A stretch of DNA of 64,000 bases from contig OX597827.1 of assembly GCA_951406725.2 (NCBI GenBank), forward strand, positions 72,106,001-72,170,000, written 5' to 3'. The translations under genes were made by a program, and so were the position numbers. Below the pieces are notes generated by a model. It saw only the letters and a program-made list of their open reading frames with translations, did not search any database and was not told where the DNA came from. The DNA is from Octopus vulgaris. Lineage: Eukaryota. Below are positions 10,631 to 59,858 of this stretch, piece after piece. Positions within the stretch are counted from its first letter, which is position 1. Each line of letters starts with the position of its first letter.

Positions 10631-11880
10631 TGACTATAAAATAATTATCTTTATATTTAAATGTTATATTGTTTTAATCCAAATGAAAATAAAAATTATA
10701 TGTTGACACTTGTGAGGTCTAATACTGTTACCTTGTAAAATTTGATTTGATTTGGTGGAGCCATTTCAGAATGTATAGGGAACTGATAGACAGACAGACA
10801 AAGAATTTTATACATATAGTGATGAGAAAGTGACACATTAGATTTGTGGGTGTTGTGAAAAAAGACAAAATTAAGTGGGAAACAATTAAGGAATTTATCA
10901 AGAGTTATGTCCCTTAGTCCTCCCACCACCACCACCAAGAACAACAAATCCTGAGTTAGCTGTAAAGCAGCAAGAGTCTGGTGGGTAAAAATATGTTTGT
11001 ATGTGTGTATGGAGAAGTTTAAGAGGTTGGTATGAATGTAAAGCTGATATATATGTAGTGAGAATATTTTTGAAGGGTGGAATGAGCAGGTACCTGGACT
11101 TTTAACTTGATGTTTCGGTGCATATGGGTGTGTGTATTCCTGCATGTATGTTTTGGTTAAAAGCTTTGTTGGGTTCTCAGGATGTAACCGTGGGAGGACC
11201 GATGGTGGAGAACCTAGTGGAGAGGCCATGCTTACACTGTAAAGTGAGAAAGAAAAATGGCACATTCATGCTCAAACTTTGATCACATGACCACAATAGT
11301 TTCAACTATAAGCATGCTGGCACAGAAGGTGGTGTGACAATAATAAAGATATGTTGTGGCAAAATTACAGATAACTTTTGACTTCCTTTTGTAGATACAC
11401 AGAGTTTCTTACAGCTGTTTCTGGAATAGTCGAATGTGCGGTTCACCATATTGAGTAAGGATTTCATGGCCTGAGTATTCCATCATCAGAGGGGAAAATG
11501 TCAGAGGGATGTAAAAGCAAGGGAAAGTCTCCAGTTGAGGATATTAGTTGTATTCCAGTTTGTTGAGAATGAGGGAAGGATCAGAGTCAAATAGGAATGG
11601 GTTAGGTAGATCCATGATCAAATAAAAATTCAGGTATAGTTTAATGTCCAATAGTAGCTTCAAATGGAAATGTTCAATGATAATTCATGGTGAGGAAAAG
11701 TGCAAGTTTTAAATAAATAAATAAATAAACAAAGAAAGAAAATAGAAAGATATGCACGCATACTTAAACATGCATATAGAGTCTATTTTGAAATTCAACT
11801 CCAAGATAAGGAACAAGTCTATCTTTGTCATCACTTTTTGTAGAGTATATCAATATATGTGTGTGTATTTCTGTGTATAT

Positions 11881-11920
<40 letters not shown>

Positions 11921-13527
11921 CAACACATTTCACCACACAAATATTGATGACAAAGACATATTTGTTTCTTATCTTGGAGTTGAATTTGAAAATAAACTGA
12001 ATACATATCAGTACATTGAATCACATGTGAACACACATATACATATGTATGTATACATGCACACGCACACGTATACACACACACGTATACATACATACAT
12101 ACATACATGCATGCATACATACATATAAACATACATATATACATACATACGTATATATATCCTTTCATGTGATGTTGCATTTTTAGTAGTGGGTTTAGTC
12201 TTAGCACTTACTGTATATCCATTATATGCCATTTTTTATCAGCTTCTTATGTATTATACATACATACATACATACATACATACATACATACATACAGGCA
12301 GACAAAAATATGGACAGACAGACAGACTGATAAAGAGATAGATAAATATATATATTTGTGTGTGTACATACATACATACGTATATGCATATTTATGTACT
12401 CTGTTTTCTCCATGGATTACCAAGAATTTTTGGAAAAAAGTAAAAAATTTAAGAAATTGGGGTGGGGAGGGAAAAATTAAAAATATTGAGAACATGTTTT
12501 TTGGACAAAATCCTAATCTCCTGCATCAAAAACATAAGAATTAGAAGAAATTTAAGAGGAAAGTAAAGTGGGGGTGCAAGTGTTACCGCAGACATGCTAG
12601 AAACAACAGGTAAAGGACAGAATTTCTGAAAAAACTTGCCTTTAAGTTTATATCAATGATTGGGTTTTTAAATACACTCAATACAAAAAAATTAGAAAAG
12701 GTCATTTCAATTGGATTTGAGCTGTAATTTTGTGCATGGACACAGCAAGAAATAACATACTTCATACAGAAGTTTTACCTAGAGTGTGTGTGTGTGTGTG
12801 TGTGTGTGCCAAAGGAAGTTATTTTATGGCACTCTTTCATTTAAAGCAGCAAAGTTATCAACTTGATTATATGGTCAATCAGATGGGATCAAATAATTGT
12901 TCGTTAATTTTCATAGAAATTTTTTAATTGTTTTATGCTTTGAAGAAAGCAAAAATTGAAAGAGAAGAGAAAGTGAAACTGCAGCATTTGCTTTGAAGTG
13001 AGACCAGAAAGTGAAAGAGAGGAGAATGTGAAAGATGTATGTATGTGTGTATGCAATGGACATGTGTGTGTGTGTATGCGTGCATGAGAAAGAGAAGAGA
13101 GTGAGTGAAGGTGTGTATTGTCGTGTATGTATTTTTTGCATGTTTGTGTAAGTGGCACTTGCTCTCTCTCTCACTTTCACACACACACACAGTCTTTCAT
13201 ATGCACGTACATAAATATATATGTATATATCCATTTTGTATGTATGTGTGCATGTGCATGTGAGGGAGAGACTGAGTGACTGTATTTCCTCATACTATAT
13301 AGAGAAGTGGCTGCCTTTTAATGAAATATTTTTGGTAGTGACTTACTTTAGTACAATATTTATGTGTACATTTTCATAAATATTTGTCCGAGTAGAGTTC
13401 TACACATGCGTGAAACAAGCAAATCAAAATATTGCCCAAAAATGACCTTAAAATTATGTGACCCAACCTCATTTCCGAGGTTATTTTAGTAATAAAAAAG
13501 AGTTGTTGTACCAAAACTATAGTTTAT

Positions 13528-17856: not shown

Positions 17857-18060
17857 AAATAGAAAGATGAATAATCTTGTAGTAGATTAATCAAAAGTTT
17901 AACCGATACCTTAGTAGCAAAAATCACAGCAGTAAAACAGCACGGTTGGAGGTACAACCATATGGTGTTGCAACCGTGTGTTGGTGCGGATAATTGAAAT
18001 TAGAACATTATTGGTGAATTGAAGAAATGGAGCTGAACGCAGATTGAACAGAAATCGTTT

Positions 18061-18155
18061 TATTTCATTCTACACGTGTTTCGAAAGGCACAAATTACCA
18101 AAATCCGATGGAATAATGGGACCATATTGTGTCTTTCTCTTCAGGAAGAAAATAG
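18061..18155 (-). ncRNA. Mirror-image type I hammerhead ribozyme motif
   Basis: Reverse complement of the 18195-18289 motif within the palindrome; predicted cut between 18071 and 18070. Confidence 0.7.
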
Positions 18156-18194
18156 GAAATCTGTTGGAAAAACATTGTTTTTCCAATGGATTTC

Positions 18195-18289
18195 CTATTT
18201 TCTTCCTGAAGAGAAAGACACAATATGGTCCCATTATTCCATCGGATTTTGGTAATTTGTGCCTTTCGAAACACGTGTAGAATGAAATA
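18195..18289 (+). ncRNA. Type I hammerhead ribozyme motif (long stem II, palindromic stem III)
   Basis: CTGAAGA at 18206-18212; stem II GAAAGACACAA/TTGTGCCTTTC; GAAA at 18268-18271; C-ACGT-G, then TA, with predicted cut after 18279. Stem I (TTTCTTC / GAATGAAA) is imperfect. Confidence 0.7.
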
Positions 18290-18547
18290 AAACGATTTCT
18301 GTTCAATCTGCGTTCAGCTCCATTTCTTCAATTCACCAATAATGTTATATATATATATATATATATATATAAGTAGTTGAATGAATTATCCTATTATGGA
18401 TAATTCGGTTAACCGATACCCGGGTAGCAAATTTACGTCAGAAAGCACGGTTGAAGCTACATGCCAAGGGCAGAAATCACATTATCACTATGGACTCCGT
18501 GTGGGCAGTCATCTAAAAGTTTTTGTTCGTCATGATGCTGACATGAG

Positions 18548-18646
18548 TTCCTTGTCTTTCCTGAGGAGAAGACGGCATAATGCACCCTTTATTCCTTCGG
18601 AATTAAGAATATGCAGTCTTCGAAACATGTGTCGAGAATAAAGGAA
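18548..18646 (+). ncRNA. Type I hammerhead ribozyme motif, family 2
   Basis: CTGAGGA at 18561-18567; stem II GAAGAC-GGCATA/TATGCA-GTCTTC; GAAA at 18622-18625; C-ATGT-G-TC with predicted cut after 18633. Stem I TTCCTT..TTTC / GAGA..AAGGAA. Confidence 0.7.
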
Positions 18647-18675
18647 TTTTGTTAAATCCTCGTTCGACTCCATTC

Positions 18676-18727
<52 letters not shown>

Positions 18728-23120: not shown

Positions 23121-23308
23121 ACATACAAATTAAGGACTGAACACGTAAAGTGGACAGTCAACATGCTAGATATAGACGTCAAATCGCCATTCTCCACAAA
23201 GAGTATGTGCTGAGTTTTATTTGAGAACATACTCTTTGGGGAGAATGGCGATTTGACGTCTATATCTAGCATGTTGACTGTCCACTTTTCGTGTTCAGTC
23301 CATAATTT

Positions 23309-23314
<6 letters not shown>
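23121..23314. repeat. Fold-back element, 88-bp arms with an 18-nt loop
   Basis: Arms 23121-23208 and 23227-23314 are reverse complements with a few mismatches; (TA)n lies nearby on both sides. Confidence 0.85.
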
Positions 23315-23354
<40 letters not shown>

Positions 23355-24278
23355 GCACACATATATATGCGCGCGCGCTGTACTCCAGTTGTTGCGAAGA
23401 AATGGTACGAAACATAGAACACAACGAAAAGCTTTTAGTTATATGTTTTGTGTAATGTTTTATTATTTTACATTTTTTAAAGAAAAAAAAAAGGTTATTG
23501 CTTCATGGTTACTGAAAAGAATTTCGTTATTGAAACATAAATCATAATTATTATTTGATTATGTATAACGCCCACAGTAGGGAATTGTTACCACCGTGAA
23601 AGATGATAGAACGAACCTACTTCCTGGAAAAAAAAAATTTAATGAATTCTTACATTGGCCTAAGGAGATGTTATTTGTAATATAACTCTACTCACTCTCA
23701 CCCAGTGTGTGCATTTTTCTCCCTTTTATTTTGCATATTTTATCGACTTCAACATCCGTCCTAGAAGGGATGGAAGACGATGTCGTCCGTCGTGAGATTC
23801 GAACACGATGCTATAGAAGGACGACGTTTAGTATTATAGATCGTGACCACCTGTACCACTCATCACCTTGATGATGATGATGATGGTGATGATTACAGAA
23901 GATATAATGTACAAATAATAGCAGGAAAAGAAATTAATGTTCATTTGTTGACCCCCTTTTTTTCAATGCAAGATAACCCGTTTTGGGGTTAACATGTTAT
24001 TACATAGTGACATATTCCCACAATCAAGTAGAAAACCACGTTTATATATATACATATATATATATATATATACATACATATATATATATATATATAATAT
24101 GTAGATTGTCTATTTTATGTGTTTCCTCTTGGGGAGTGGCGCTGTTTACTAGGTTTTACAAACACATAATCTTGCACATCTAAACAACTACGAACCAAAG
24201 AAGGAGCTTCTGTTTAGTCCATCGACCGACTCGGTATAACGACCGAATCTCCCCTCAAACCACGCCCTGCTATCGTGG

Positions 24279-29742: not shown

Positions 29743-30170
29743 AATTGCAGTGTGGAAGGTGTTTATAAGGCCATTTAAGAAACACACAAAAAAAACATTA
29801 GATTCACTTCAACATTTAAATTTAATTTGTCAAAATATTTTTGTTGCTTTGAGACCGCGACCTGTTCACTGACAGAATTCTGTGCTGCAGATCAGGTCAC
29901 TTGCTATGCAAGTACATCTCCGACATAAATAAATAAATATATATATATATAGTTCGTAGATGGGAATCAGATATTCTTCGTATAGAATACACTTAGTAAT
30001 GCTCAAGATTTACACTTGAGCGGGTAGAGAAGTAAATGTGTAAGGATAAGCAAGTTTAACAAATCAATATATAAATTATGTTAAATGCATGAAATGCAAA
30101 AAAATGTGTATGTTTACATACAAAAAGGTTCGACTTACACAGAATACAAATGATATAGAGAATTAACAGT

Positions 30171-42240: not shown

Positions 42241-42923
42241 AACACTGACATTGAAACATTTCGTTGCAGTCAGAAACGTTCTTCGGTTTCATTATTATTT
42301 CTCATGAGGGTTATTTTATCCTTTTACTGCAGAAATCGGAGATATACTCTCAAATATTCAACATCCGCAACTGTAGAAAGCAGTTTTTATATACCAATCT
42401 ATTCTTTTGTCAAAGAATGTCATGTTAGAAACTATCCTCAGTTGAAATATGTCAAGTTTATTGGGGTAACGTGACTTGCAGAAAATACCAATTCAGTTTT
42501 TTTTTGGTAGATGTTTAACATTATTACAAGAATAAACATGAAACTTAATTTTTCAGTTGAAGGGTTAATGTCCATTTTTGCCTTGCTAGCATGTATTAGA
42601 TGAGGAATTATTTTATAGATTGATATATATATATATATATACTACAAAATTAGAGAATGGAGAAACATACTTAAATCAATAAAACATCAACTATCCGATT
42701 ATCTATAATTGAGTAGTTGAATGAATTATCTTATTATGGATAATTCGGTTAACCGATACCTCGGTAGCAAATTCACGTCAGAAAAACACGGTTGAAGCTA
42801 CATGCCTAGGGCAGAGATCACGTGCTATTGTGTGGAAATTTGTGTGTTTTTTTAAATACAAATAAATGAAAGAATGGAGTTGAACGAAGAAATTAGCAAA
42901 ATTCCTCTATATAAGTTCCTTGC

Positions 42924-43006
42924 TTTTCCTGATGAGAAGGCGGCATAATGCACCCCTTATTCCTTCGAAATTAGGAATATGCAGCCTTCGAAACATATGT
43001 CGAAAA
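42924..43006 (+). ncRNA. Type I hammerhead ribozyme motif, family 2, sense strand of HTT intron 2
   Basis: TTTTC-CTGATGA(42929-42935)-GAAGGC.GGCATA...TATGCA.GCCTTC-GAAA(42990-42993)-C-ATAT-G-TC|GAAAA, predicted cut after 43001. Enclosed by ~55-bp inverted arms 42856-42910 and 43011-43065. Confidence 0.8.
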
Positions 43007-43735
43007 TAAAATAGAGGAATTTTGTTAATTTAGTTGTTCAACTCCATTCTTTTATTTATTTGTATATATATATATATATATAATACTGCAGTAGAAAGTA
43101 GTGGCTGTGTGGTAAGTAGCTTGCTTACGAACCACATGGTTCCAGGTTCAGTCCCACTGGGTGGCACCTTGGGTAAGTGTTTCTACTATAGCCTCGGGGC
43201 GACCAAAGTGGATTTAGTAGACAGAAACTGAAAGAAGCCTGTCATATGTATGTATACGTATGTGTGTGTGTGTGTCTGTGTTTGTCCCCCCAACATTGCT
43301 TGACAACCGATGCTGGTGTGTTTACGTCCCCGTAACTTTAGTGGTTCGGTAAAAGAGACCGATAGAATAAGTACTAAGCTTACAAAGAATTAAGTCCTGG
43401 GGTTGATTTGCTCGACTAAAGGTGGTGCTCCAGCATGGCAGTTTATAAAATTATCTTACTCCTTTATTTGTTTCAGTCATTTGACTGTGGCCATGCTGGA
43501 GCACCACATTTAGTCAAGCAAATCGACCCCAGGGCTTAATTCTTTGTAAGCCTAATACTTATTCTATCGGTCTCTTTTACCGAACCACTAAGTTACGGGG
43601 ACGTAAACACACCAGCATCGGTTGTGTTAGTCTCGTTTGAAACTATTTTTCATTGAGATACATCAAGTTCATTCTGGTAGCTGGCTTGCAGAAAACGAAC
43701 CAATGGTAGATATTTAACATCATTACTGGAATAAC

Positions 43736-44311: not shown

Positions 44312-44446
44312 GATGGTTGCACCAGGCTCCAGTCTTGATCTGGCAGAGTTTCTACAGCTGGATACCCTTCCTAATGGTTGGCATTAGGAAGGGCATCCAG
44401 CTGTAGAAACTCTGCCAGATCAAGACTGGAGCCTGGTGCAGCCATC
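44312..44446. repeat. Hairpin from inverted duplication within an RTE-tail element (65-bp arms, 5-nt loop)
   Basis: 44312-44376 is the reverse complement of 44382-44446 with 2 differences. Confidence 0.9.
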
Positions 44447-44557: not shown

Positions 44558-44678
44558 ATCTATAGCAGATTTTCCTAAGTTCCTTGGAATAGCTATGGAA
44601 ACATTTCTAATGCTCTGTGATGATCCTGAAGCTGATATTCGCATGGTTGCTGATGAATGCCTCAATAAAACAATTAAG
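44558..44678 (+). CDS. HTT: Huntingtin coding exon 3
   Basis: [40 protein letters not shown] (human: [33 protein letters not shown]). 121 nt, AG/GT. Confidence 0.97.
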
Positions 44679-46671
44679 GTAAACATCCCCCAAAAATTTT
44701 ATTTGTTTATTTCATAGGAAGTGATCATCTACGTTTGAGAATTTCAAAGACAAATTGTTGTTCGTTAGAGCCAAGGCAGCATTAATGAGACAGACCTATA
44801 ATCAAAGGCATTCCAGACTTGATCAAGTCTTTTTTTTTTTTTTTTTTTTTTTTCCAGACATACTGTACCTAGAACTAAAATACTCCAACATGTTCTCTTT
44901 TCCCTTGTTAATTGAGCTCTGACTAATCATTATGCCAAAGTGAGAATCTGGACTCTGTGAATGGGCTGATGTGACCTTTGTGGAATTATTACAACCTGTT
45001 GGTGCAGGCTTGGCTGTGTGGTTAAGAAGCTTACTTTGCATTCCAAATGGCTCTGGGTTCAGTCCTGCTATGTGACACAGTGATAGGAAATTTCACTGTA
45101 AACATTTTTGTCTGCGGATAATTTACCATAAGAAATTTCATTTTAAATGACATCATCAAGTTTGTTTAACGTTTGACAATGAATAATACTTGTCTACTTA
45201 ATGCTTTTTATTCGGGTATTATTCAATGTCAAACATTAAAAAATAAACCTGAAAACTTGTCTATTTAATGCTTTTATGTGAAGGCGCATGGCTCAGTGGT
45301 TAGAGCATCAAGCTGATGATTATGAGTTTGTGAGTTCGATTCCTGGACCAGGCTGTGTGTTGTGTTCTTGAGCAAGATACTTTATTTCATTTCGTCCTAG
45401 TTCACTCAGTTGTAGAAATGAGTTGCAACATCACTGGTGCCAATCTGTATCAGCCTTTGCTTTCCCCTTGGATAACATCTGTGGCGTGGAGAGGATAGTC
45501 TGGTATGTATGGGCGACTGCTGGTCTTCCATAAACAACCTTGCTCAGACTTGTACCGAGGAGGGGAACTTTCTAGGTGCAATCTCATGGTCAGTCATGAC
45601 TGAATTGGGTCTTTACCCTTTAGTTAACAGTTCATTAAAATCTTTTATTATTCCTTTTTTTATTTTATTTCAAAAATGCTGACATAATACGGTTTATCAT
45701 TGTCCATATGGTAAATTCATCTCACAACAAATTTTCCTCGACAGAGCCTGGTGCAGCCTCCTGACTTGCCAGTCCTCAGTCAAACTGTCCAACCCATGCC
45801 AGTGTGGAAAGTGGACGTTAGACAATGATGATGGTGATGAGGATGAGTGACATTTCTTATGGCAAATTTTCTGGACATGACATGGCACCTTGGGCCGATG
45901 TCTTCCACTATAGCCCTAAGCCAACTGATGTCTTATGAGTAAACTTGGTAAATGGAAACTGTGTGGAAGCATGTTGTATATAAAATGTGTGTGTGTGTGT
46001 GTCTTTGTGCTTGTGTTTTCTCCTTCCTCCACAGCTGACGATTGGTGTGCGTTTGTTTACATTCCCGTAACTTCACAGTCCAGCAAAAGAAACAAATATA
46101 TTAAGTGCCAGACTTAAGTACTGGGGTCATTTTGTTTGACTAAACTCTTCAAGGATGTGTCCTTGCAAGGCCAAACTCTAATAACTGAAACAAGTAAAAG
46201 ATAAAAATAATAAAAAAAAAAAAAAGAGACTGATCTTAGGACTTCAATATTCCAATATGTCCTACTTTCCTGTGTTAACTGAGCTCCAAGCTAATCCTTA
46301 CCCTCATAGAAGTATTTAGATTCTCTAACCAGGTTGATGTGACCTTTGTGAAATTATCACAATATATCACTCTCTATCTTGCTGTCTTTTAGTCGCCTCT
46401 TACACCATGCAGGGAATATAGCGACTGAATTCTACTGACCACCCCATCCCAGTCGCAGGGGATTTTGCTAGTTAACGAATAGCTGGGACCCTTACAGATG
46501 CTACCGCTCTGGGCCAGAATAGACCTGGGAACAATAGTGGCTAAGAGGTGCTTCCACATTCCTCAAACCCTGAAACCAGGGCCCCAGGGTCCTACTACCA
46601 GATGTAGTTTATAGTCATAGCCAGGTCTTGTGGGTACCCGCTCCTAAAAAAAAAATGGGGAATAGGCCTGG

Positions 46672-50471: not shown

Positions 50472-50489
<18 letters not shown>

Positions 50490-50507
<18 letters not shown>

Positions 50508-50535
50508 TATATATACACACAAATATAAATATATG

Positions 50536-50567
<32 letters not shown>

Positions 50568-50584
50568 CAAATATAAATATATGC

Positions 50585-50625
<41 letters not shown>

Positions 50626-50640
50626 AATATAAATATATGC

Positions 50641-50681
<41 letters not shown>

Positions 50682-50740
50682 CACAAATATAAATATATGC
50701 ATATATACATATATGTACATACTTACACATATATGTATAT
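50490..50740. repeat. AT-rich minisatellite (ACACAAATATAAATATATGCATATATACAT(AT)n), about 4 units
   Basis: Direct reading of the sequence. Confidence 0.85.
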
Positions 50741-51788
50741 ATACATGCATATATGGGTACAGGACATCAAAAAATGTAGACACAATGAGAAAACGAAAAC
50801 ATAAAAACAAAAACATAGAAAATGAACTTTTTTTCGAACAACAAAAAAACAAAAACAAATGGAGAAACGAGACATGTAACATAAAGAACATTCCCCTTCA
50901 TCAGTTGTTCCTGTTTCATCTTCTCCGCATTGTGAAGGTAAGGACAAAACGCGACTTTGTTGAAACAGTCCTTCCTGCAAGGCAAATTAAAAAAATTTGG
51001 GATTTTTTGCGGAGGGTGAATGTGGTAACAAAAACAGGACAGTGAGAACAAGACAGTAAAAACAGACGGTGAGGGCTGTTAAGCCAAGACGATGTGAAAA
51101 AATTATTATTATGAATGATAGAAAGACAAGCTATGAGAAGAGACAGGTGAAAGCATGTCTTGTCTTTACGAAGGAAGTGAAAGAAAGATCGCCTTTTGTA
51201 ACGTGTCAGCAACGAGAGTCTAGGAGGAAGAGTGAAAGAGACAGAAAACGGTGATGGTGAGAGGAGGAGAATAGGGAAAGGGAGGGACAGAAAGGAAGAG
51301 CAAGAGAAGGAGATAGATAGACAGAGAAGAGGTAGAAGAGATACGGTTTGTTTCTACAACGATACATTAAGGACCCTTATTTATGAGAACTACTGGATCA
51401 CTTGAATCCATATACCGTGACTTAAATATTTATAAGAGTGGAAGAGATAGAAGTAGATAGAAGAGTGTGCATTGTAATTATTAAGATAAAACTTACTTGG
51501 AAAAGGATGCGTGGTGTATATACATGACAGGGTTCTGTGTTTCAGTTTCTGTCTGCCAAGTCAACCAAATCCACTTACAAGGATTTGGTTGGCCCAAGAC
51601 TGTAGTAGAAAATACTTGCCCAAGGTGCCATGCATTCTATACGGTCTGTTTGTACAACGATACATTAAGGACCCTTATTTATGAGAACTACTGGATCACT
51701 TGAATCCATATACCGTGGCTTAAATATTTATAAGATATATACACCAACAAACAATTCTCATCTTGTTTTTCTGTTCCTTTCTTTCCAG

Positions 51789-51928
51789 ACTTTGTTAGAA
51801 ACAAACTTGGGCCGTTTACAGGTGGAACTGTACAAAGAGATCAAGAAAAATGGACCATCTCGAAGTCTTAGAGGAGCACTTTGGAGATTTGCAGATATGT
51901 GCCATTTGATACGTCCTCAGAAATGCAG
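51789..51928 (+). CDS. HTT: Huntingtin coding exon 4
   Basis: [46 protein letters not shown](R). 140 nt, AG/GT. Confidence 0.97.
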
Positions 51929-53193
51929 GTATGTTAATCTACAAATCCCAGGTAATTTGTACACAAAGTACTGTATATTGTAGTAATGTACTATACTTTA
52001 GAGATCCCCTATGTGATTGTTAACTTGCTAGAAATAGCAGATATATCTTCCTTACCCCTTTAGTGTTCAGATTACTCTGTGAAATGTAATCTTTATTTAT
52101 TCGTATTGTTTTGAATTAATCATGGATTATCTCACAGCTTTGAGATTTTGATAAAATTGGGAGGCAGAAACTGAAGAAATCAGTGTGTGAATGTGTGTGT
52201 GTTTTTTCGTGTGTTTATGTTATGTTTTTGTGTTTTGTTTGTTTATGTGTGTGTTTGTGTGTGCATGTGTGTGTGTGTGATTTTTGTGTATGTTTTTTGT
52301 ACATGCATATTTGTGTTTCTGTGTATGTGTGTTTGTGTGTGTGTATGTTCATTTTTAAAAAGACATTGCAGGTGAGGTGTGAGAAGTCGAATCTGGCTGA
52401 TTTGAACATAAAACAAGTAGAATATTCGGCCCAGATATGACTGGTTTAAATGCCAAATTGTGAAATGACGCCTTATTACTTTTAAAGATGGTTACCCAGC
52501 TGTATTTTAAGGCCCTCGTGCAATGTTGGTTTAAGGGTTACACATATTTTATTATTTTACTAGTTTCAGTCATTGGTCTGTGGCCATGCTGGAACACTGG
52601 TTTTAAGGGTTTTAATCAATTCTCTAGATCTCACTCTTAAGCCTAATATTTATGTTGTTGACCTTGCAGGGATGAAAAGCAAGTTGACCTGACCTCACTA
52701 TAAATAAAATGATTTGGAGAGTTCTGTATGCTGTAGGGTATCTTTGATGGACATACCAATTACTGTATTTTAACATGTATAAGGAACCCCCTAATTTTGG
52801 GGGCTTAAAATTTGGAAAAATTGTTTTGTAAGGGATTATAATACTTATTTCTTTATTACCCACAAGGGGCTAAACACAGAGGGGACAAACAAGGACAGAC
52901 ATAGGTATTAAGTCGATTACATCGACCCCAGTGCGTAACTGGTACTTAATTTATCGACCCCGAAAGGATGAAAGGCAAAGTCGACCTTGGCGGAATTTGA
53001 ACTCACAACGTAACGCAGACGAAATACTGCTAAGCATTTCGCCCGGCGTGCTAACGTTTCTGCCAGCTCATCGCCTTAAATTATAATAAGGGATTATAAT
53101 ACTATCCATGGATTAGAGACTCCCATATTTTTTTAACCTAAGTTTTGACAAAAAAGGGTTCCTTGTACATGTTAAATTACGGTATATCATATG

Positions 53194-54124: not shown

Positions 54125-54380
54125 CTGTCTGTCTGTCCCTCAGCGCCACTTGGCAGTTTGGCAAAAGAAACCAAAAGAATAAGTCCCAGGCTTTAAAAAA
54201 AAATAATTACCGGGGTCAATTCATTTGACTAAAAACTCTTCGAGGCAGAGCCCCAGCATGGCCGCAGTCTAATGACTGAAATAAGGAAAATAAAAAAACA
54301 AAGATGAAGTGAGGTTTACCATTTTATTTTCATATCACCATGTAAACTAACCCTTGTTCTCTTTCTTTATTCTTGTGCAG

Positions 54381-54519
54381 GCCATATATTGTCAACTTGC
54401 TGCCCTGCATTGCACGGGTTTGTAAGCGTGAAGAAGAGGCCATTCAAGAAACCCTTGCAGCTTCCATGCAGAAAATATGTCCTGTACTTATGGCTTTTGC
54501 AAATGATTCAGAAGTCAAA
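54381..54519 (+). CDS. HTT: Huntingtin coding exon 5
   Basis: [46 protein letters not shown]. 139 nt, AG/GT. Confidence 0.97.
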
Positions 54520-55004
54520 GTAAGGAACATTCTTCTTGCTCACATTTCTCTTGCATTTTTTCGTCTTTCCCTGTGTCATTGCAAAGTAACGGTTAATAAA
54601 TATTTACAACACAGTTACATCATCACCATCATCATCATCATCGTTTAACGTCCGTTCTCCATGCTAGCATGGGTTGGACGGTTCGACCGGGGATCTGGGA
54701 AGCCAGAAGGCTGCACCAGGCTCCGGTCTTATCTGGCAATGTTTCTACAGCTGGATGCCCTTCCTAACGCCAACCACTCCGTGAGTGTAGTGGGTGCTTT
54801 TTACGTGCCACCTGCACTGGTGCCAGGCGAGGCTAGCATCGGCCACGGTCGGATTGGTGCATTTTACGTGCCACCGGCATGGAAGTCAGTTACAAAGTTA
54901 TAAAAATTGAAGTGTTTTTTTTTATTGTCTTTCATATAGATAATCAAATTTATTTTGTTTATTTAACCTTTTGACCTGTCTTTTTTTTTGTCCCCCTCAT
55001 GAAG

Positions 55005-55146
55005 GCATTACTAAAGAGTTTTCTACCAAATTTGAAGTCTTCGTCTGCATCAACCCGGCGTACAGCAGCTTCAAGTCTCTCACTGATCTGTCAGCATTCA
55101 CACAACCCTTTGTCTTTCATAAACAGATTAGTCATTATGCTACTAG
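55005..55146 (+). CDS. HTT: Huntingtin coding exon 6
   Basis: ALLKSFLPNLKSSSASTRRTAASSLSLICQHSHNPLSFINRLVIMLL. 142 nt, AG/GT. Confidence 0.95.
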
Positions 55147-56755
55147 GTGAGTATTTGGATGGTTCCTTTCTCTTCTGTTTTTAAGCCAATATTATATTAA
55201 TGCATGATGTGTTAGAGCAGTGGCTCTCAACAACCATTTTTTGCCTATGGGCCCCTTTGATTACTATTTTACTCAGATGGACCCTCCTAATCATTTGATG
55301 TTTTAAAAATCCTATAATATTTTTATAATTAAACTAGCTTAAAAGCCACACTCCTTGTGGGCTTTTAAGCTAGCTCCTGCAGTGGCCTAATTGGGCCTGT
55401 AGCATAAAACTAAAGAGCGCTAACTAGCATGACTATAATATGTCTATAATGACTATATGCCCCGGTGGTGTTTGATCAGAGGTTAAGGACGGATGAGAAT
55501 TAATTCTGTTATGCAATCATTCTATTGTTCCGATCCCAAGTTGAATTCCTATTGTTGGCCAATTTGTCCCAAAGTTCTTATCTCGATGTAAAATTAATGA
55601 AACGAATGTCAGTTATCTCCTCCTTGGTCTCTGACGTCATCTGACAAATACCAACCAAGATGGCATGAATCAACCAAGCTTTGCCTGCTAGAAATAGCAG
55701 CCCAAATGCTTTTAAATCAGATCTCAATGCTGGATATTCAAGAACCAAATGAAGGGCAGATTTTCAATCCCGGGATCATCCTGATTCCAAAATGGTATAA
55801 TATGTCTATGTAGAGTAAATATAGACTGAAATACATGGAACCTGGACAGAGGGAATTTTGCTTTTATTACAGTAGATATTATTAGGAATTGTATAAAAAG
55901 AAATTGTTAAAATATTTTGTGTATTGTAAAAGTATAACTGATTTATTGCACATAAAAAACTTTAAGTAGGTTTGAGAAGCTGGGACATGGCCAGTTTGAA
56001 CATAAAACAGATAATTTATTTGGATGGGATATGCTTGGTTTAAATGCACATGTAATATAAGCCCAGCTTCACATGTAGGACCGAGGCCAATTTTTTGAGA
56101 CATTTTATTATACTGTCAAATATAGTAAATAGATGTTATTTTATATTAAATGCAACCAAACTAGGCGCAGGAGTGGCTGTGTGGTAAGTAGCTTGCTAAC
56201 CAACCACATGGTTCCGGGTTCAGTCCCACTGCGTGGCATCTTGGGCAAGTGTCTTCTGCTATAGCCCTGGGCCGACCAATGCCTTGTGAGTGGATTTGGT
56301 AGACGGATACTGAAAGAAGCCTGTCGTATATATGTGTATATATATATGTGTGTGTCTGTGTTTGTCCCCCTAGCATTGCTTGACAACCGATGCTGGTGTG
56401 TTTACGTCCCCGTCACTTAGCGGCTCGGCAAAAGAGACCGATAGAATAAGTACTGGGCTTACAAAGAATAAGTTCCGGGGTCGATTTGCTCGACTAAAGG
56501 CGGTGCTCCAGCATGGCCACAGTCAAATGACTGAAACATATAAAAGAGTAAAAGAGAGAGTAAAACTCTTAATTATTTTTCAAAATTAATAGAATCACAT
56601 AGCTAGTGTTTATCATCAGAAATATGGTTACAAAAGGGTTATGAAGTGGTGAAGTTGTTATATGTTCATGTGCACATGCACATATCTGCATATGTGTGTG
56701 CATTTCTTATCTACATCTAAAAGTTTTACTCGTAAACTTTTCCGATCATTTACAG

Positions 56756-59308: not shown

Positions 59309-59858
59309 TGTTCAATTTACAACGAAAGATCCAGAGGAAGAGTATATATATATTATAGTTTCTTACATTTGTAAAAATGACTTATTGATGAACACTGTTT
59401 TATATATCATCCCTGATGAGATTGATGCATTTTTTCACATTATTCTCCCTCTTGGATTTATTTTAATGCATCTATTGAAACATATGCTGGTGATTTGGTG
59501 ATGTTAATGGTTTAATAACATCTTGAGCGCTTGTCTCCATTTTCCATTATTCTTATATGTATGTATGGATGGATGCATGGATTCACAAAAAAAACAAAAG
59601 ACGAAGACGGGTGGTGTAGACAACAAACATATGTATTAGTTTAGCACTCGGGAAGTGAAAAAGTCTTTAACGTTTTGAGCCTATGCTCTTTCACAGAAAG
59701 AAACAAGAAGAGAAAATAATATACATACATATATATATGTATATATATGTATGTATATATAATGGGAAGGTTTACGAAAATAAACAAAAGACGAAGGCAG
59801 GTGGAGTACAAACAAACAAATGTATTAGTATAGCGCCCAGGAATAGAAATAGAAAAAG

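What the first reader, a model, noticed from the sequence alone, without database searches (positions are those of the whole stretch)
42856..43065. Intact hammerhead ribozyme in sense orientation within huntingtin intron 2
This is the best-formed copy. It has the canonical CUGAUGA and GAAA core, a GUC cleavage triplet (cut after 43001), perfect 5-bp proximal stem I (UUUUC/GAAAA), a long stem II with a nested hairpin (AUUCCU/AGGAAU), and a perfect palindromic ACAUAUGU for dimerisation. The ~55-bp flanking inverted arms extend stem I. It would be present in every HTT pre-mRNA between coding exons 2 and 3. If active, as a dimer in trans or with a protein helper, it could cut the intron co-transcriptionally and affect HTT output or splicing. 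Intronic hammerheads are known in other animals; a role here is inference.
Basis: partly seen in the sequence, partly recalled or inferred. Interest (0 to 1): 0.85.

Follow-up and report, generated by a model that had tools for sequence, protein, structure and literature searches.

The report
Retrotransposon-borne hammerhead ribozyme in huntingtin intron
The hammerhead ribozyme motif is real and intact and lies on the sense strand of a huntingtin intron, but it is the tail end of a Penelope-like retrotransposon present in thousands of copies (209 with the identical ribozyme), so it is an ordinary passenger and not a huntingtin-specific device.

Summary
Observation confirmed; interpretation only partly supported. 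At 42924-43006 (+) there is a complete type I hammerhead. It has stem I UUUUC/GAAAA, the CUGAUGA box, a 54-nt helix II, GAAA, a 2-bp helix III with a palindromic AUAU loop, and GUC with the cut after 43001. It lies about 1.56 kb upstream of the exon homologous to human HTT exon 3, on the sense strand.

It is not a locus-specific element. The 158 nt at 42911-43068 are the 3' end of a 5'-truncated retroelement. [quoted passage not shown] The "flanking inverted arm" (42853-42910) is an inverted, 5'-truncated second copy of the same 3' end. The whole unit sits in a (TA)n microsatellite. Both features are PLE hallmarks.

The genome holds at least 6,414 hammerheads of this architecture and 209 copies with the identical 73-nt ribozyme. 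The window itself holds three more strong copies and one decayed copy. Helices covary between subfamilies, so the fold is selected for the element's own RNA processing. Nothing indicates a role in HTT. Self-cleavage of this copy remains untested.

The parts
42624..42641 (.). (TA)n microsatellite on the left of the insertion unit
   Evidence: it matches the (TA)n on the right, and family copies are regularly flanked by (TA)n
42642..42711 (-). About 70-nt extension between (TA)n and the Y segment. It weakly resembles a diverged reverse-complemented PLE 3' end. Its origin is unclear.
   Evidence: I2: 42623-42684 vs 43020-43081, 77% complementary; a similar extension occurs in L019
42712..42852 (-). 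'Y' segment (141 nt, reverse-complement orientation): a one-sided terminal extension found next to the 3' end of one arm in most family-1 insertions
   Evidence: 92-100% identical copies (one distant 80% match aside) in about 40 loci, always on one side only, ending ...CATTCAACTACTCAATTA(TA)n
42853..42910 (-).
   Evidence: H positions 101-158 match on the minus strand, 89.7%; I1; the head-to-head layout recurs
42911..43068 (+). Sense, 5'-truncated 3' end (158 nt) of a Penelope-like retroelement, carrying the hammerhead
   Evidence: copies run up to at least 2 kb further upstream with variable 5' truncation into an RT/GIY-YIG-type ORF
42916..42921 (+). Native distal stem I, 5' strand UUCCUU; pairs with GAGGAA at 43014-43019
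   Evidence: helix 1, 84% of cells paired, 4 of 6 pairs with compensatory change
42924..42928 (+). Stem I proximal 5' strand UUUUC
   Evidence: helix 2, 88% paired
42929..42935 (+). Core box C3-U4-G5-A6-U7-G8-A9 (CUGAUGA)
42936..42989 (+). Helix II, 54 nt: GAAGGC/GCCUUC, then GCAUA/UAUGC, then a conserved asymmetric internal loop, then UUCCU/AGGAA with an 8-nt loop
   Evidence: helix 3: 92% paired, 6 of 11 pairs with changes on both sides
42990..42992 (+). Core G12-A13-A14
42993..43000 (+). Helix III (A15.1-U16.1, C15.2-G16.2) with AUAU loop; the 8-nt palindrome ACAUAUGU can form an extended helix III in a dimer
   Evidence: loop variants AUAU, AUGU and ACGU all keep self-complementarity if G-U pairs are allowed
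43001..43001 (+). C17; predicted self-cleavage between 43001 and 43002
   Evidence: position inferred from the hammerhead numbering; cleavage not tested
43002..43019 (+). Stem I 3' strand: GAAAA (43002-43006), internal loop UAAAAUA, GAGGAA (43014-43019)
43065..43083 (.). (TA)n microsatellite on the right of the insertion unit
44559..44679 (+). Context: 121-nt HTT exon homologous to human exon 3, 1.56 kb downstream of the cleavage site
18190..18301 (+). Context: intact hammerhead of a second, younger family (GUA triplet). Its mirror copy lies at 18049-18160 (-), and together they form a perfect palindrome.
18545..18651 (+). Context: older family-1 hammerhead with a compensated helix II (GAAGAC/GUCUUC)
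59397..59506 (+). Context: decayed hammerhead relic (C instead of U at 16.1)

Best explanation
The feature is a truncated insertion of a Penelope-like retroelement (PLE) into a (TA)n microsatellite inside an HTT intron.

Shown:
- The unit (about 42642-43068) consists of a one-sided extension (Y), an inverted 58-nt copy of the element's 3' end, and a sense 158-nt copy of that 3' end.
- The sense copy carries a type I hammerhead about 67 nt from the element's terminus.

Inferred, from the literature and from covariation:
- The ribozyme belongs to the element's own life cycle. In transcripts that read through tandem or partial copies, hammerheads cut out unit-length RNA with 5'-OH and 2',3'-cyclic-phosphate ends.
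- They probably work best as dimers that build an 8-bp helix III from the palindrome ACAUAUGU.
- That RNA then serves for reverse transcription by the element's RT and endonuclease.

Inferred for HTT: this copy is a passenger. It may cut a fraction of nascent intron RNA, or none. The intron is discarded anyway, and no host function is indicated.
For: - Repeat membership: at least 2,443 candidate matches to the 216-nt element, 6,414 family-descriptor hits against 0 in the control, and 209 exact copies of the 73-nt ribozyme.
- Retroelement nature: copies share homology upstream with staggered 5' truncation points.
- ORF content: the longest copies enter an ORF with RT motifs (KDHKPN, FDISSFYPSI, YRDD) and a C-terminal CxC...YIG...NH...CxxC...CxH block.
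- RT fold: the AF2 model of a homologue (pLDDT 88.5) has TERTs as its best PDB matches.
- Pfam: RVT_1 and GIY-YIG each hit 2 of 35 homologues.
- PLE insertion hallmarks as described in PMC8557442 and PMC4209133: head-to-head inverted 5'-truncated copies, (TA)n on both sides, a one-sided extension, and 3.6-kb direct tandems in the sister family.
- Selection on the fold at family level: 87% of cells paired, against 79% in shuffles and 35-51% in slid controls. Fifteen pairs have changes on both sides. This includes stem I, which was not part of the search pattern.
- Helix III loop variants stay self-complementary.
- The window copy carries 6 changes against the consensus, all outside the ribozyme.
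Against: - No experimental or RNA-level data were available, so neither cleavage nor transcription of the element is shown.
- The GIY-YIG assignment rests on motifs and weak Pfam hits in homologues. Pfam found nothing significant in the octopus ORF itself apart from a sub-threshold RVT_1 hit, and the domain-only fold prediction failed.
- The Y extension (141-148 nt) is much longer than the 30-40-nt PLE 'tail' in the literature and is unexplained.
- Rfam hammerhead models do not score the motif.
- The covariation alignment was fitted to a model built from these same sequences, and the sequences are related, so the counts lean towards the structure.
- In nearest-neighbour folding the hammerhead-compatible fold lies 4.9-8.1 kcal/mol above the MFE in every context tried.
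Confidence: 0.85

Rival explanations
1. Exapted intronic ribozyme: this copy self-cleaves co-transcriptionally in HTT pre-mRNA, alone, as a dimer in trans or with a protein helper, and tunes HTT splicing or output.
For: - Sense orientation, 1.56 kb upstream of an HTT exon.
- All core positions and all three helices are intact, and the 73-nt ribozyme has no change against the consensus while the rest of the copy has 6.
- Two-base-pair helix III with a tetraloop is the form described for efficiently cleaving invertebrate hammerheads (PMC7229834).
- Conserved intronic hammerheads exist in amniotes (de la Pena & Garcia-Robles 2010, cited in PMC6765202).
Against: - There are 208 identical copies elsewhere and two more intact sense copies in the same 64 kb, so nothing singles this one out.
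- Zero changes in 73 nt at 3.8% divergence is expected by chance about 6% of the time (my calculation), so it is not evidence of constraint.
- The insertion looks young (JC about 0.04).
- Animal PLE hammerheads tested in vitro cleaved poorly, and single motifs did not cleave at all (PMC4209133).
- No partner hammerhead lies nearby on the same strand; the nearest is 24 kb away.
Confidence: 0.05
2. Catalytically dead relic: the motif is intact on paper, but in this copy the RNA is trapped in other folds, so it never cleaves.
For: - The MFE of 42853-43068 is a -93 kcal/mol rod in which CUUUUC pairs with GAGAAG instead of forming stems I and II. The hammerhead-compatible fold is 6.6 kcal/mol worse.
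- The inverted arm offers the 3' strand of stem I a perfect 14-bp partner that replaces the native UUCCUU/GAGGAA helix.
- PLE hammerheads have low in vitro activity (PMC4209133).
Against: - The energy gap is no larger than in ordinary copies without the arm (8.1 kcal/mol) or in the bare ribozyme (4.9).
- Nearest-neighbour models ignore the hammerhead's core and tertiary contacts.
- During transcription the ribozyme is complete before most of the 3' arm has been made.
Confidence: 0.35
3. Member of a short-tandem 'non-LTR retrozyme' family that makes small circular RNAs, and not a fragment of an autonomous PLE.
For: Type I hammerhead with a short palindromic helix III and a rod-like fold of the 216-nt unit (z = -15), resembling retrozyme circRNAs (PMC7229834). 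Retrozymes are proposed to derive from PLE terminal repeats (bioRxiv 10.64898/2026.07.22.740005).
Against: - There is only one sense hammerhead of this unit at the locus.
- Among the listed genome copies I saw inverted head-to-head pairs and dispersed singles but no 170-400-bp head-to-tail arrays; the closest same-strand pair was 1,084 bp apart.
- Homology continues upstream into an RT-bearing ORF.
Confidence: 0.07
4. Miniature inverted-repeat DNA transposon (MITE) that happens to carry a hammerhead between its terminal inverted repeats.
For: 65-nt inverted arms at 86% complementarity with AT-rich flanks.
Against: - The arm length is not fixed. Other copies have inverted arms of 48 to about 560 nt, or none, with different junctions.
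- One arm continues into Y while the other ends in (TA)n, so the ends are not equivalent.
- Parent copies are 5'-truncated and RT-encoding.
- No target-site duplication can be defined.
Confidence: 0.02

Closest known systems
Hammerhead ribozymes of Penelope-like elements (Cervera & de la Pena 2014, PMC4209133; Lunse, Weinberg & Breaker 2017, cited in PMC6765202)
   Same: - Type I topology inside the terminal repeat or 3' end of an RT plus GIY-YIG retroelement.
- Thousands of mostly solitary copies from truncated elements.
- Pairs 100-700 bp apart on opposite strands.
- Conserved G10.1-C11.1 pair and palindromic helix III/loop 3 that imply dimers.
- Consensus families full of compensatory changes.
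   Different: The described animal PLE 'min-HHRs' have almost no helix III and a 6-8-bp helix II. Here helix III is the canonical 2 bp plus tetraloop, and helix II is a 54-nt three-segment helix with a sequence-conserved internal loop. Stem I has a canonical-like internal loop plus a distal helix. Rfam models miss the motif.
Canonical metazoan type I hammerheads in non-LTR retrozymes, Schistosoma Sm-alpha SINE-like elements and newt satellite 2 (PMC7229834)
   Same: Core, open helix I with an internal loop, helix III of 1-2 bp capped by a palindromic tetraloop, low GC content, rod-like folding of the unit.
   Different: Those occur in 170-400-bp head-to-tail arrays that yield circRNAs, and their helix II is about 4 bp with a loop that contacts loop 1. 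This one is single at its locus, sits in an inverted partial duplication, and has a long helix II.
Conserved intronic hammerheads of amniotes (HH9/HH10; de la Pena & Garcia-Robles 2010, cited in PMC6765202)
   Same: Sense-strand hammerhead inside an intron of a protein-coding gene.
   Different: Those are single-copy, orthologously conserved over hundreds of millions of years, and scored by dedicated Rfam models. This one is a multi-copy repeat member with no evidence of orthologous conservation.

Membership tests
Hammerhead ribozyme, type I | Conserved core: C3 U4 G5 A6 N7 G8 A9, G12 A13 A14, A15.1-U16.1 pair, H17 (not G) at the cleavage site | tested here: met
   CUGAUGA 42929-42935, GAA 42990-42992, A42993-U43000, C43001
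Hammerhead ribozyme, type I | Three helices around the core; helices II and III closed and helix I open; G10.1-C11.1 closes helix II | tested here: met
   Stem I 42924-42928/43002-43006; helix II 42936-42989 starting G-C; helix III AC/GU with AUAU loop
Hammerhead ribozyme, type I | Helices supported by compensatory change among relatives | tested here: met
   24 distinct sequences: 87.2% of cells paired (shuffles 79.1%, slid 35-51%), 15 pairs with changes on both sides, covariation score 0.294 vs 0.165. Caveat: the alignment was fitted to the model. Helix III and the three base pairs at the foot of helix II are invariant because they were part of the search pattern.
Hammerhead ribozyme, type I | Scores with the curated Rfam hammerhead covariance models | tested here: not met
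   No hammerhead family reported at gathering score or in the whole-window E-value listing (top 150 of 174 shown), and none at E<=10 on 42840-43080. The 54-nt helix II is the likely reason (inference).
Hammerhead ribozyme, type I | Site-specific self-cleavage giving 2',3'-cyclic phosphate and 5'-OH ends | not testable with these tools
   Needs in vitro transcription or RNA-end sequencing
Penelope-like element (PLE) | Single ORF with a telomerase-related reverse transcriptase | tested here: met
   Longer family copies enter an ORF with RT motifs. There are 45 homologues at E down to 7e-90. The AF2 model of homologue P0010 (33% identical, pLDDT 88.5) has TERT structures as top PDB matches, E=1e-9. 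RVT_1 is only sub-threshold in the octopus ORF.
Penelope-like element (PLE) | GIY-YIG endonuclease with CCHH cysteines/histidines, C-terminal to the RT | tested here: inconclusive
   For: conserved ...VY..(10)..YIG....R..NH...C.LC..EK...LLN...CRH block preceded by CxC...C...G.C. Pfam GIY-YIG hits 2 of 35 homologues, best E=6e-4. The beta-beta-alpha-alpha-beta-alpha order appears in the model. Against: no Pfam hit in the octopus ORF, no PDB sequence hit, and the domain-only fold failed.
Penelope-like element (PLE) | Complex insertions: 5'-truncation, partial tandems (pLTRs), and an inverted 5'-truncated copy abutting the 5' end | tested here: met
   Staggered 5' ends. Head-to-head pairs always in the order minus then plus. 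3,624-bp direct tandems in the sister family. The description of this feature is in PMC8557442.
Penelope-like element (PLE) | Hammerhead within the terminal repeat / near the 3' end | tested here: met
   Cleavage site 67 nt from the element's 3' terminus in all copies examined
Penelope-like element (PLE) | Insertion bias for microsatellites such as (TA)n; short one-sided 'tail' | tested here: met
   (TA)n flanks in the window and in most loci. A one-sided extension is present, but it is 141-148 nt and not 30-40 nt.
Non-LTR retrozyme | Head-to-tail arrays of 170-400-bp units, each with a hammerhead | tested here: not met
   One sense copy of this unit at the locus. Listed genome copies are inverted pairs or singles.
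Conserved host intronic hammerhead (HH9/HH10 type) | Single-copy and orthologously conserved | tested here: not met
   209 identical copies in the genome. Orthologous conservation itself could not be tested because no other cephalopod genome was available.

The most novel reading that the evidence does not exclude
The sense-strand PLE hammerheads in HTT (42913-43024, plus 18190-18301 and 18545-18651) are active in nascent pre-mRNA. They might, for example, dimerise in trans with abundant PLE transcripts through the 8-nt palindrome. Octopus HTT output would then be modulated by retroelement ribozymes. A related possibility is that the 54-nt helix II with its sequence-conserved internal loop defines a new structural subclass of hammerhead that current Rfam models cannot see.
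Probability: 0.06. Interest if true: 0.65.

Novelty: new member of a known kind. Interest (0 to 1): 0.28.

Why it matters
For HTT biology it probably does not matter. The ribozyme is a recent repeat insertion like thousands of others.

It has some value for ribozyme and transposon annotation:
- This genome carries at least 6,400 intact-core hammerheads with an unusually long, covarying helix II that every Rfam hammerhead model misses. Standard pipelines would therefore report the genome as hammerhead-free.
- The copies document PLE insertion architecture (head-to-head partial copies, (TA)n targets, a long one-sided extension) in a cephalopod.
- If intact sense-strand copies in introns do cleave, they would add a genome-wide layer of co-transcriptional RNA cutting. 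That could be tested by looking for orientation bias.

Tried and rejected
- Rfam at gathering score, at E-value threshold on the whole window, and at E<=10 on a 241-nt slice gave no hammerhead hit. The many 'miRNA' hits are microsatellites and repeat hairpins.
- My first DNA descriptor used a helix II gap that was too short and found nothing. The corrected one found the site.
- MITE hypothesis: rejected, because arm lengths and junctions vary and the parent copies encode an RT.
- Pfam on the octopus ORF pieces gave only a sub-threshold RVT_1 hit. A profile search against PDB sequences found nothing relevant.
- Single-sequence AF2 of the endonuclease domain gave pLDDT 37 and was not used.
- Locating HTT exon 2: the best candidate (29780-29863, 84 nt like the human exon) is out of phase with the downstream exon, so I do not accept it.
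- ARAGORN found no tRNA near the element.
- Thermodynamic comparison of the hammerhead fold with the MFE is inconclusive. The gap is 4.9-8.1 kcal/mol in all contexts.
- The Lunse et al. paper could not be read.
- The species was not independently determined.
Full report

Yes. Reading 42700-43250 shows, on the + strand:
- stem I 5' strand UUUUC (42924-42928);
- CUGAUGA (42929-42935);
- a 54-nt helix II (42936-42989) closed by GAAGGC/GCCUUC;
- GAA (42990-42992);
- A-C-AUAU-G-U (42993-43000);
- C17 at 43001;
- the stem I 3' strand GAAAA (43002-43006).

All eleven conserved core positions, the G10.1-C11.1 pair and the A15.1-U16.1 pair are canonical. A descriptor CTGATGA-N(35-65)-GAAAC-NNNN-GTC hits once in the window and never in 100 dinucleotide shuffles. 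The inverted arms are 42853-42917 and 43004-43068, 65 nt at 86% complementarity. The 216-nt unit folds into a rod of -93 kcal/mol, z = -15.

No Rfam hammerhead model reports the site. This holds at gathering score, in the listed whole-window E-value matches and at E<=10 on a 241-nt slice. The long helix II is the probable reason, but that is inference.

**2. Is it in huntingtin?**

The exon at 44559-44679 (+) has a cag|A acceptor and an AAG|gtaaac donor. It is 121 nt long, which as I recall is also the length of human exon 3. It translates to ...[40 protein letters not shown] and matches Huntingtin chains of the PDB (6ez8 residues 116-152) at E=1e-10.

Loose tblastn with remembered human fragments places further HTT exons at 51789-51929, 54376-54522 and 54999-55148, all on the + strand. 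The hammerhead is therefore on the sense strand, 1.56 kb upstream of the exon-3 homologue.

I could not find the upstream exon. The best candidate, 29780-29863, is out of phase. So 'intron 2' is plausible but not shown.

**3. What is it?**

*It is a repeat.* A search of the window's own 2.8-Gb assembly with the 216-nt unit gave at least 2,443 candidates. Most copies match only positions 59-216, which I call H (window 42911-43068), at about 96%. The first 58 nt match the reverse complement of the end of H. The left 'arm' is therefore an inverted copy of the last 58 nt of H.

*The inverted layout recurs.* Many loci show the same head-to-head layout with much longer arms, for example L011/L012, L017 (361 nt) and L028 (about 560 nt). 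It also appears among exact-ribozyme copies, always in the order minus copy then plus copy. Copies with short arms like the window's have different junction points, some at microhomologies. That points to independent events of one integration mechanism and not to a designed helix.

*H is the 3' end of a long retroelement.* Upstream of H, copies share homology with staggered 5' ends at many positions over at least 1.5 kb. This is the signature of a 5'-truncating retroelement. The longest copies enter an open frame of more than 740 codons containing:
- RT motifs (VKDHKPN, FDISSFYPSI, MGSTDSAQIADLVG, YRDD, FLDV);
- a C-terminal block IYQC...FYIGAT...RISNH...CGVC...RCMH.

*The ORF looks like a PLE ORF.* It has 45 homologues down to E=7e-90. 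Their alignment conserves a CxC...C...G.C cluster, then VY/YIG/R..NH/E/N and C.LC...CRH. PMC8557442 describes this pattern for canonical endonuclease-bearing Penelope-like elements. An AlphaFold model of a homologue (pLDDT 88.5) finds telomerase reverse transcriptases as its best PDB matches. That fits the known sister relationship of PLE RTs and TERTs. Pfam RVT_1 and GIY-YIG each hit only 2 of 35 homologues and do not hit the octopus ORF significantly. I therefore rate the endonuclease assignment as probable, not proven.

*The insertion site fits too.* The insertion unit is bounded by (TA)n on both sides, at 42624-42641 and 43065-43083. Most other copies are too. On one side only, family-1 insertions carry a 141-148-nt segment Y (window 42712-42852, reverse-complemented).

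PLE papers describe all of the following: inverted 5'-truncated copies, (TA)n targets, a one-sided 'tail', hammerheads in the terminal repeat, solitary motifs from truncated elements, and pairs 100-700 bp apart on opposite strands (PMC8557442, PMC4209133).

**4. How common is the ribozyme?**

The descriptor CTGANGAGAAR-N(40-50)-YTTCGAAAC-NNNN-GTH has 6,414 hits in the genome (3,183 + and 3,231 -). The reversed-pattern control has 0. The exact 73-nt ribozyme of the window occurs 209 times.

A covariance model built from six representatives finds, in the window:
- 42913-43024 (+);
- 18545-18651 (+);
- 18190-18301 (+);
- 18049-18160 (-);
- a decayed relic at 59397-59506 (+).

The pair at 18 kb belongs to a second family that is about 70% similar. 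Its genome copies are 99% identical, and four of them lie 3,624 bp apart as direct repeats. Hammerhead-bearing PLEs have therefore been active recently in this genome.

**5. Is the fold selected, and at what level?**

I took twenty further subfamily representatives from the genome and aligned them to the model. On 24 distinct sequences:
- 87.2% of pair cells are standard pairs, against 79.1% in shuffles and 35-51% with slid partners;
- 15 pairs show changes on both sides;
- the covariation score is 0.294 against 0.165, reached by 0 of 500 shuffles.

Stem I was not part of the search pattern, and 6 of its 11 pairs show compensatory change. The second segment of helix II switches between GCAUA/UAUGC, CACAA/UUGUG, UGCAUA/UAUGCA, CUGCAA/UUGCAG and others. 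The loop of helix III occurs as AUAU, AUGU or ACGU. Each of these keeps the 8-nt stretch self-complementary if G-U pairs are allowed. That is what a dimeric, extended helix III requires (Forster et al. 1988, as discussed in PMC4209133).

Caveats: the alignment is model-fitted, the sequences are related, and the pattern fixed the core and the foot of helix II.

The variation lies between subfamilies, so the selection acts on master elements, not on the host locus. The window copy has 6 differences from the 157-nt consensus (JC 0.039), all outside the ribozyme. At that divergence, zero changes in 73 nt is expected about 6% of the time (my calculation), so it is not evidence of host constraint.

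**6. Mechanism**

*Shown:* the anatomy described above.

*Inferred from the literature:* in read-through transcripts of tandem or partial PLE copies, the hammerheads release unit-length RNA with 5'-OH and cyclic-phosphate ends. That RNA may be circularised and is reverse-transcribed by the element's RT/EN (PMC4209133, PMC7229834, PMC6765202). Animal PLE hammerheads cleaved poorly in vitro and only as dimers (PMC4209133). Invertebrate canonical hammerheads with a 2-bp helix III and a tetraloop cleaved efficiently (PMC7229834). The octopus motif resembles the latter in helix III and neither in helix II.

*For this copy:* nearest-neighbour folding puts the hammerhead-compatible fold 6.6 kcal/mol above the MFE. 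That is no worse than in ordinary copies (8.1) or the bare ribozyme (4.9). The inverted arm is therefore not obviously disabling, and the calculation does not decide the matter.

*Possible effect on HTT:* if the copy cleaves, the cut is in an intron. From my own knowledge (Dye et al. 2006; Fong et al. 2009), intronic ribozyme cuts can be harmless or can abort processing, depending on their speed. In Xenopus about 43% of retrozyme copies are intronic (bioRxiv 10.64898/2026.07.22.740005), so such insertions are common.

**7. Verdict**

The sequence observation is correct. The HTT-specific functional reading is not supported. The feature is a new member of a known kind: a PLE-borne type I hammerhead. 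It has an unusual long helix II that makes the whole superfamily invisible to Rfam. I rate interest as low to moderate. What remains open is catalytic activity, orthologous conservation, the origin of the Y extension, and the role of the conserved internal loop of helix II.

Noticed in passing
window 18026-18324: Perfect head-to-head palindrome made of two copies of a second hammerhead family (CUGAAGA...GAAACACGUGUA, GUA triplet). Genome copies are 99% identical (at least 938 candidates). Four of them lie 3,624 bp apart as direct repeats on C1:119514306-119525343, which suggests a recently active full-length element. Rfam scored this palindrome as 'MIR6425', below threshold.
   Followed up: partly
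window 18372-18700: Older family-1 insertion. The reverse-complemented Y segment is fused directly to the upstream part of the element and to H, with (TA)n on both sides. Its helix II carries the compensated pair GAAGAC/GUCUUC, which recurs as a subfamily in the genome.
   Followed up: partly
window 59397-59506 (+): Decayed hammerhead relic (CUGAUGA...GAAACAUAUGCU, with C instead of U at 16.1) in a downstream HTT intron; 21.7 bits with my model.
   Followed up: no
window 44327-44431 (-): Near-perfect 105-nt hairpin 130 nt upstream of the HTT exon. It scores 56.5 bits with mir-449 (gathering score 60.4) and 58 bits with mir-3158. It is a repeat with at least 1,515 candidate copies in the genome, in which half of the hairpin is the end of another element, so it is not a conserved miRNA gene.
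   Followed up: yes
window 42712-42852 and loci L002-L051: The 'Y' segment (141-148 nt, ending ...CATTCAACTACTCAATTA before (TA)n) sits on only one side of family-1 insertions, next to the element's 3' end. It is far longer than the 30-40-nt PLE 'tail' in the literature. Its origin is unexplained; it could be a tail, the 5' end of a tandem partner, or a co-mobilised short element.
   Followed up: partly
window 42946-42961 and genome copies: The asymmetric internal loop of helix II (AUGCACCCYUUAUUCC) is conserved in sequence across subfamilies, while the helices around it covary. It might be a tertiary contact with the stem I loop or a protein-binding site. This was not tested.
   Followed up: no
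window 42853-43068 and 18026-18324: In the sense HTT pre-mRNA these inverted duplications would form about 55-bp and about 150-bp double-stranded RNA. Such RNA is a possible substrate for RNA editing or processing enzymes. This is inference only.
   Followed up: no
window 43095-43200: Immediately right of the (TA)n lies a sequence that looks like a tRNA-derived SINE by eye (…GGTTCCAGGTTCAGTCCCACTG…). ARAGORN calls no tRNA there.
   Followed up: partly
window-wide (e.g. 11850-12400, 23300-23370, 50480-50760): Dozens of sub-threshold Rfam 'mir-297/mir-466/mir-3149' matches fall on (TG)n/(TA)n microsatellites and are false positives.
   Followed up: no
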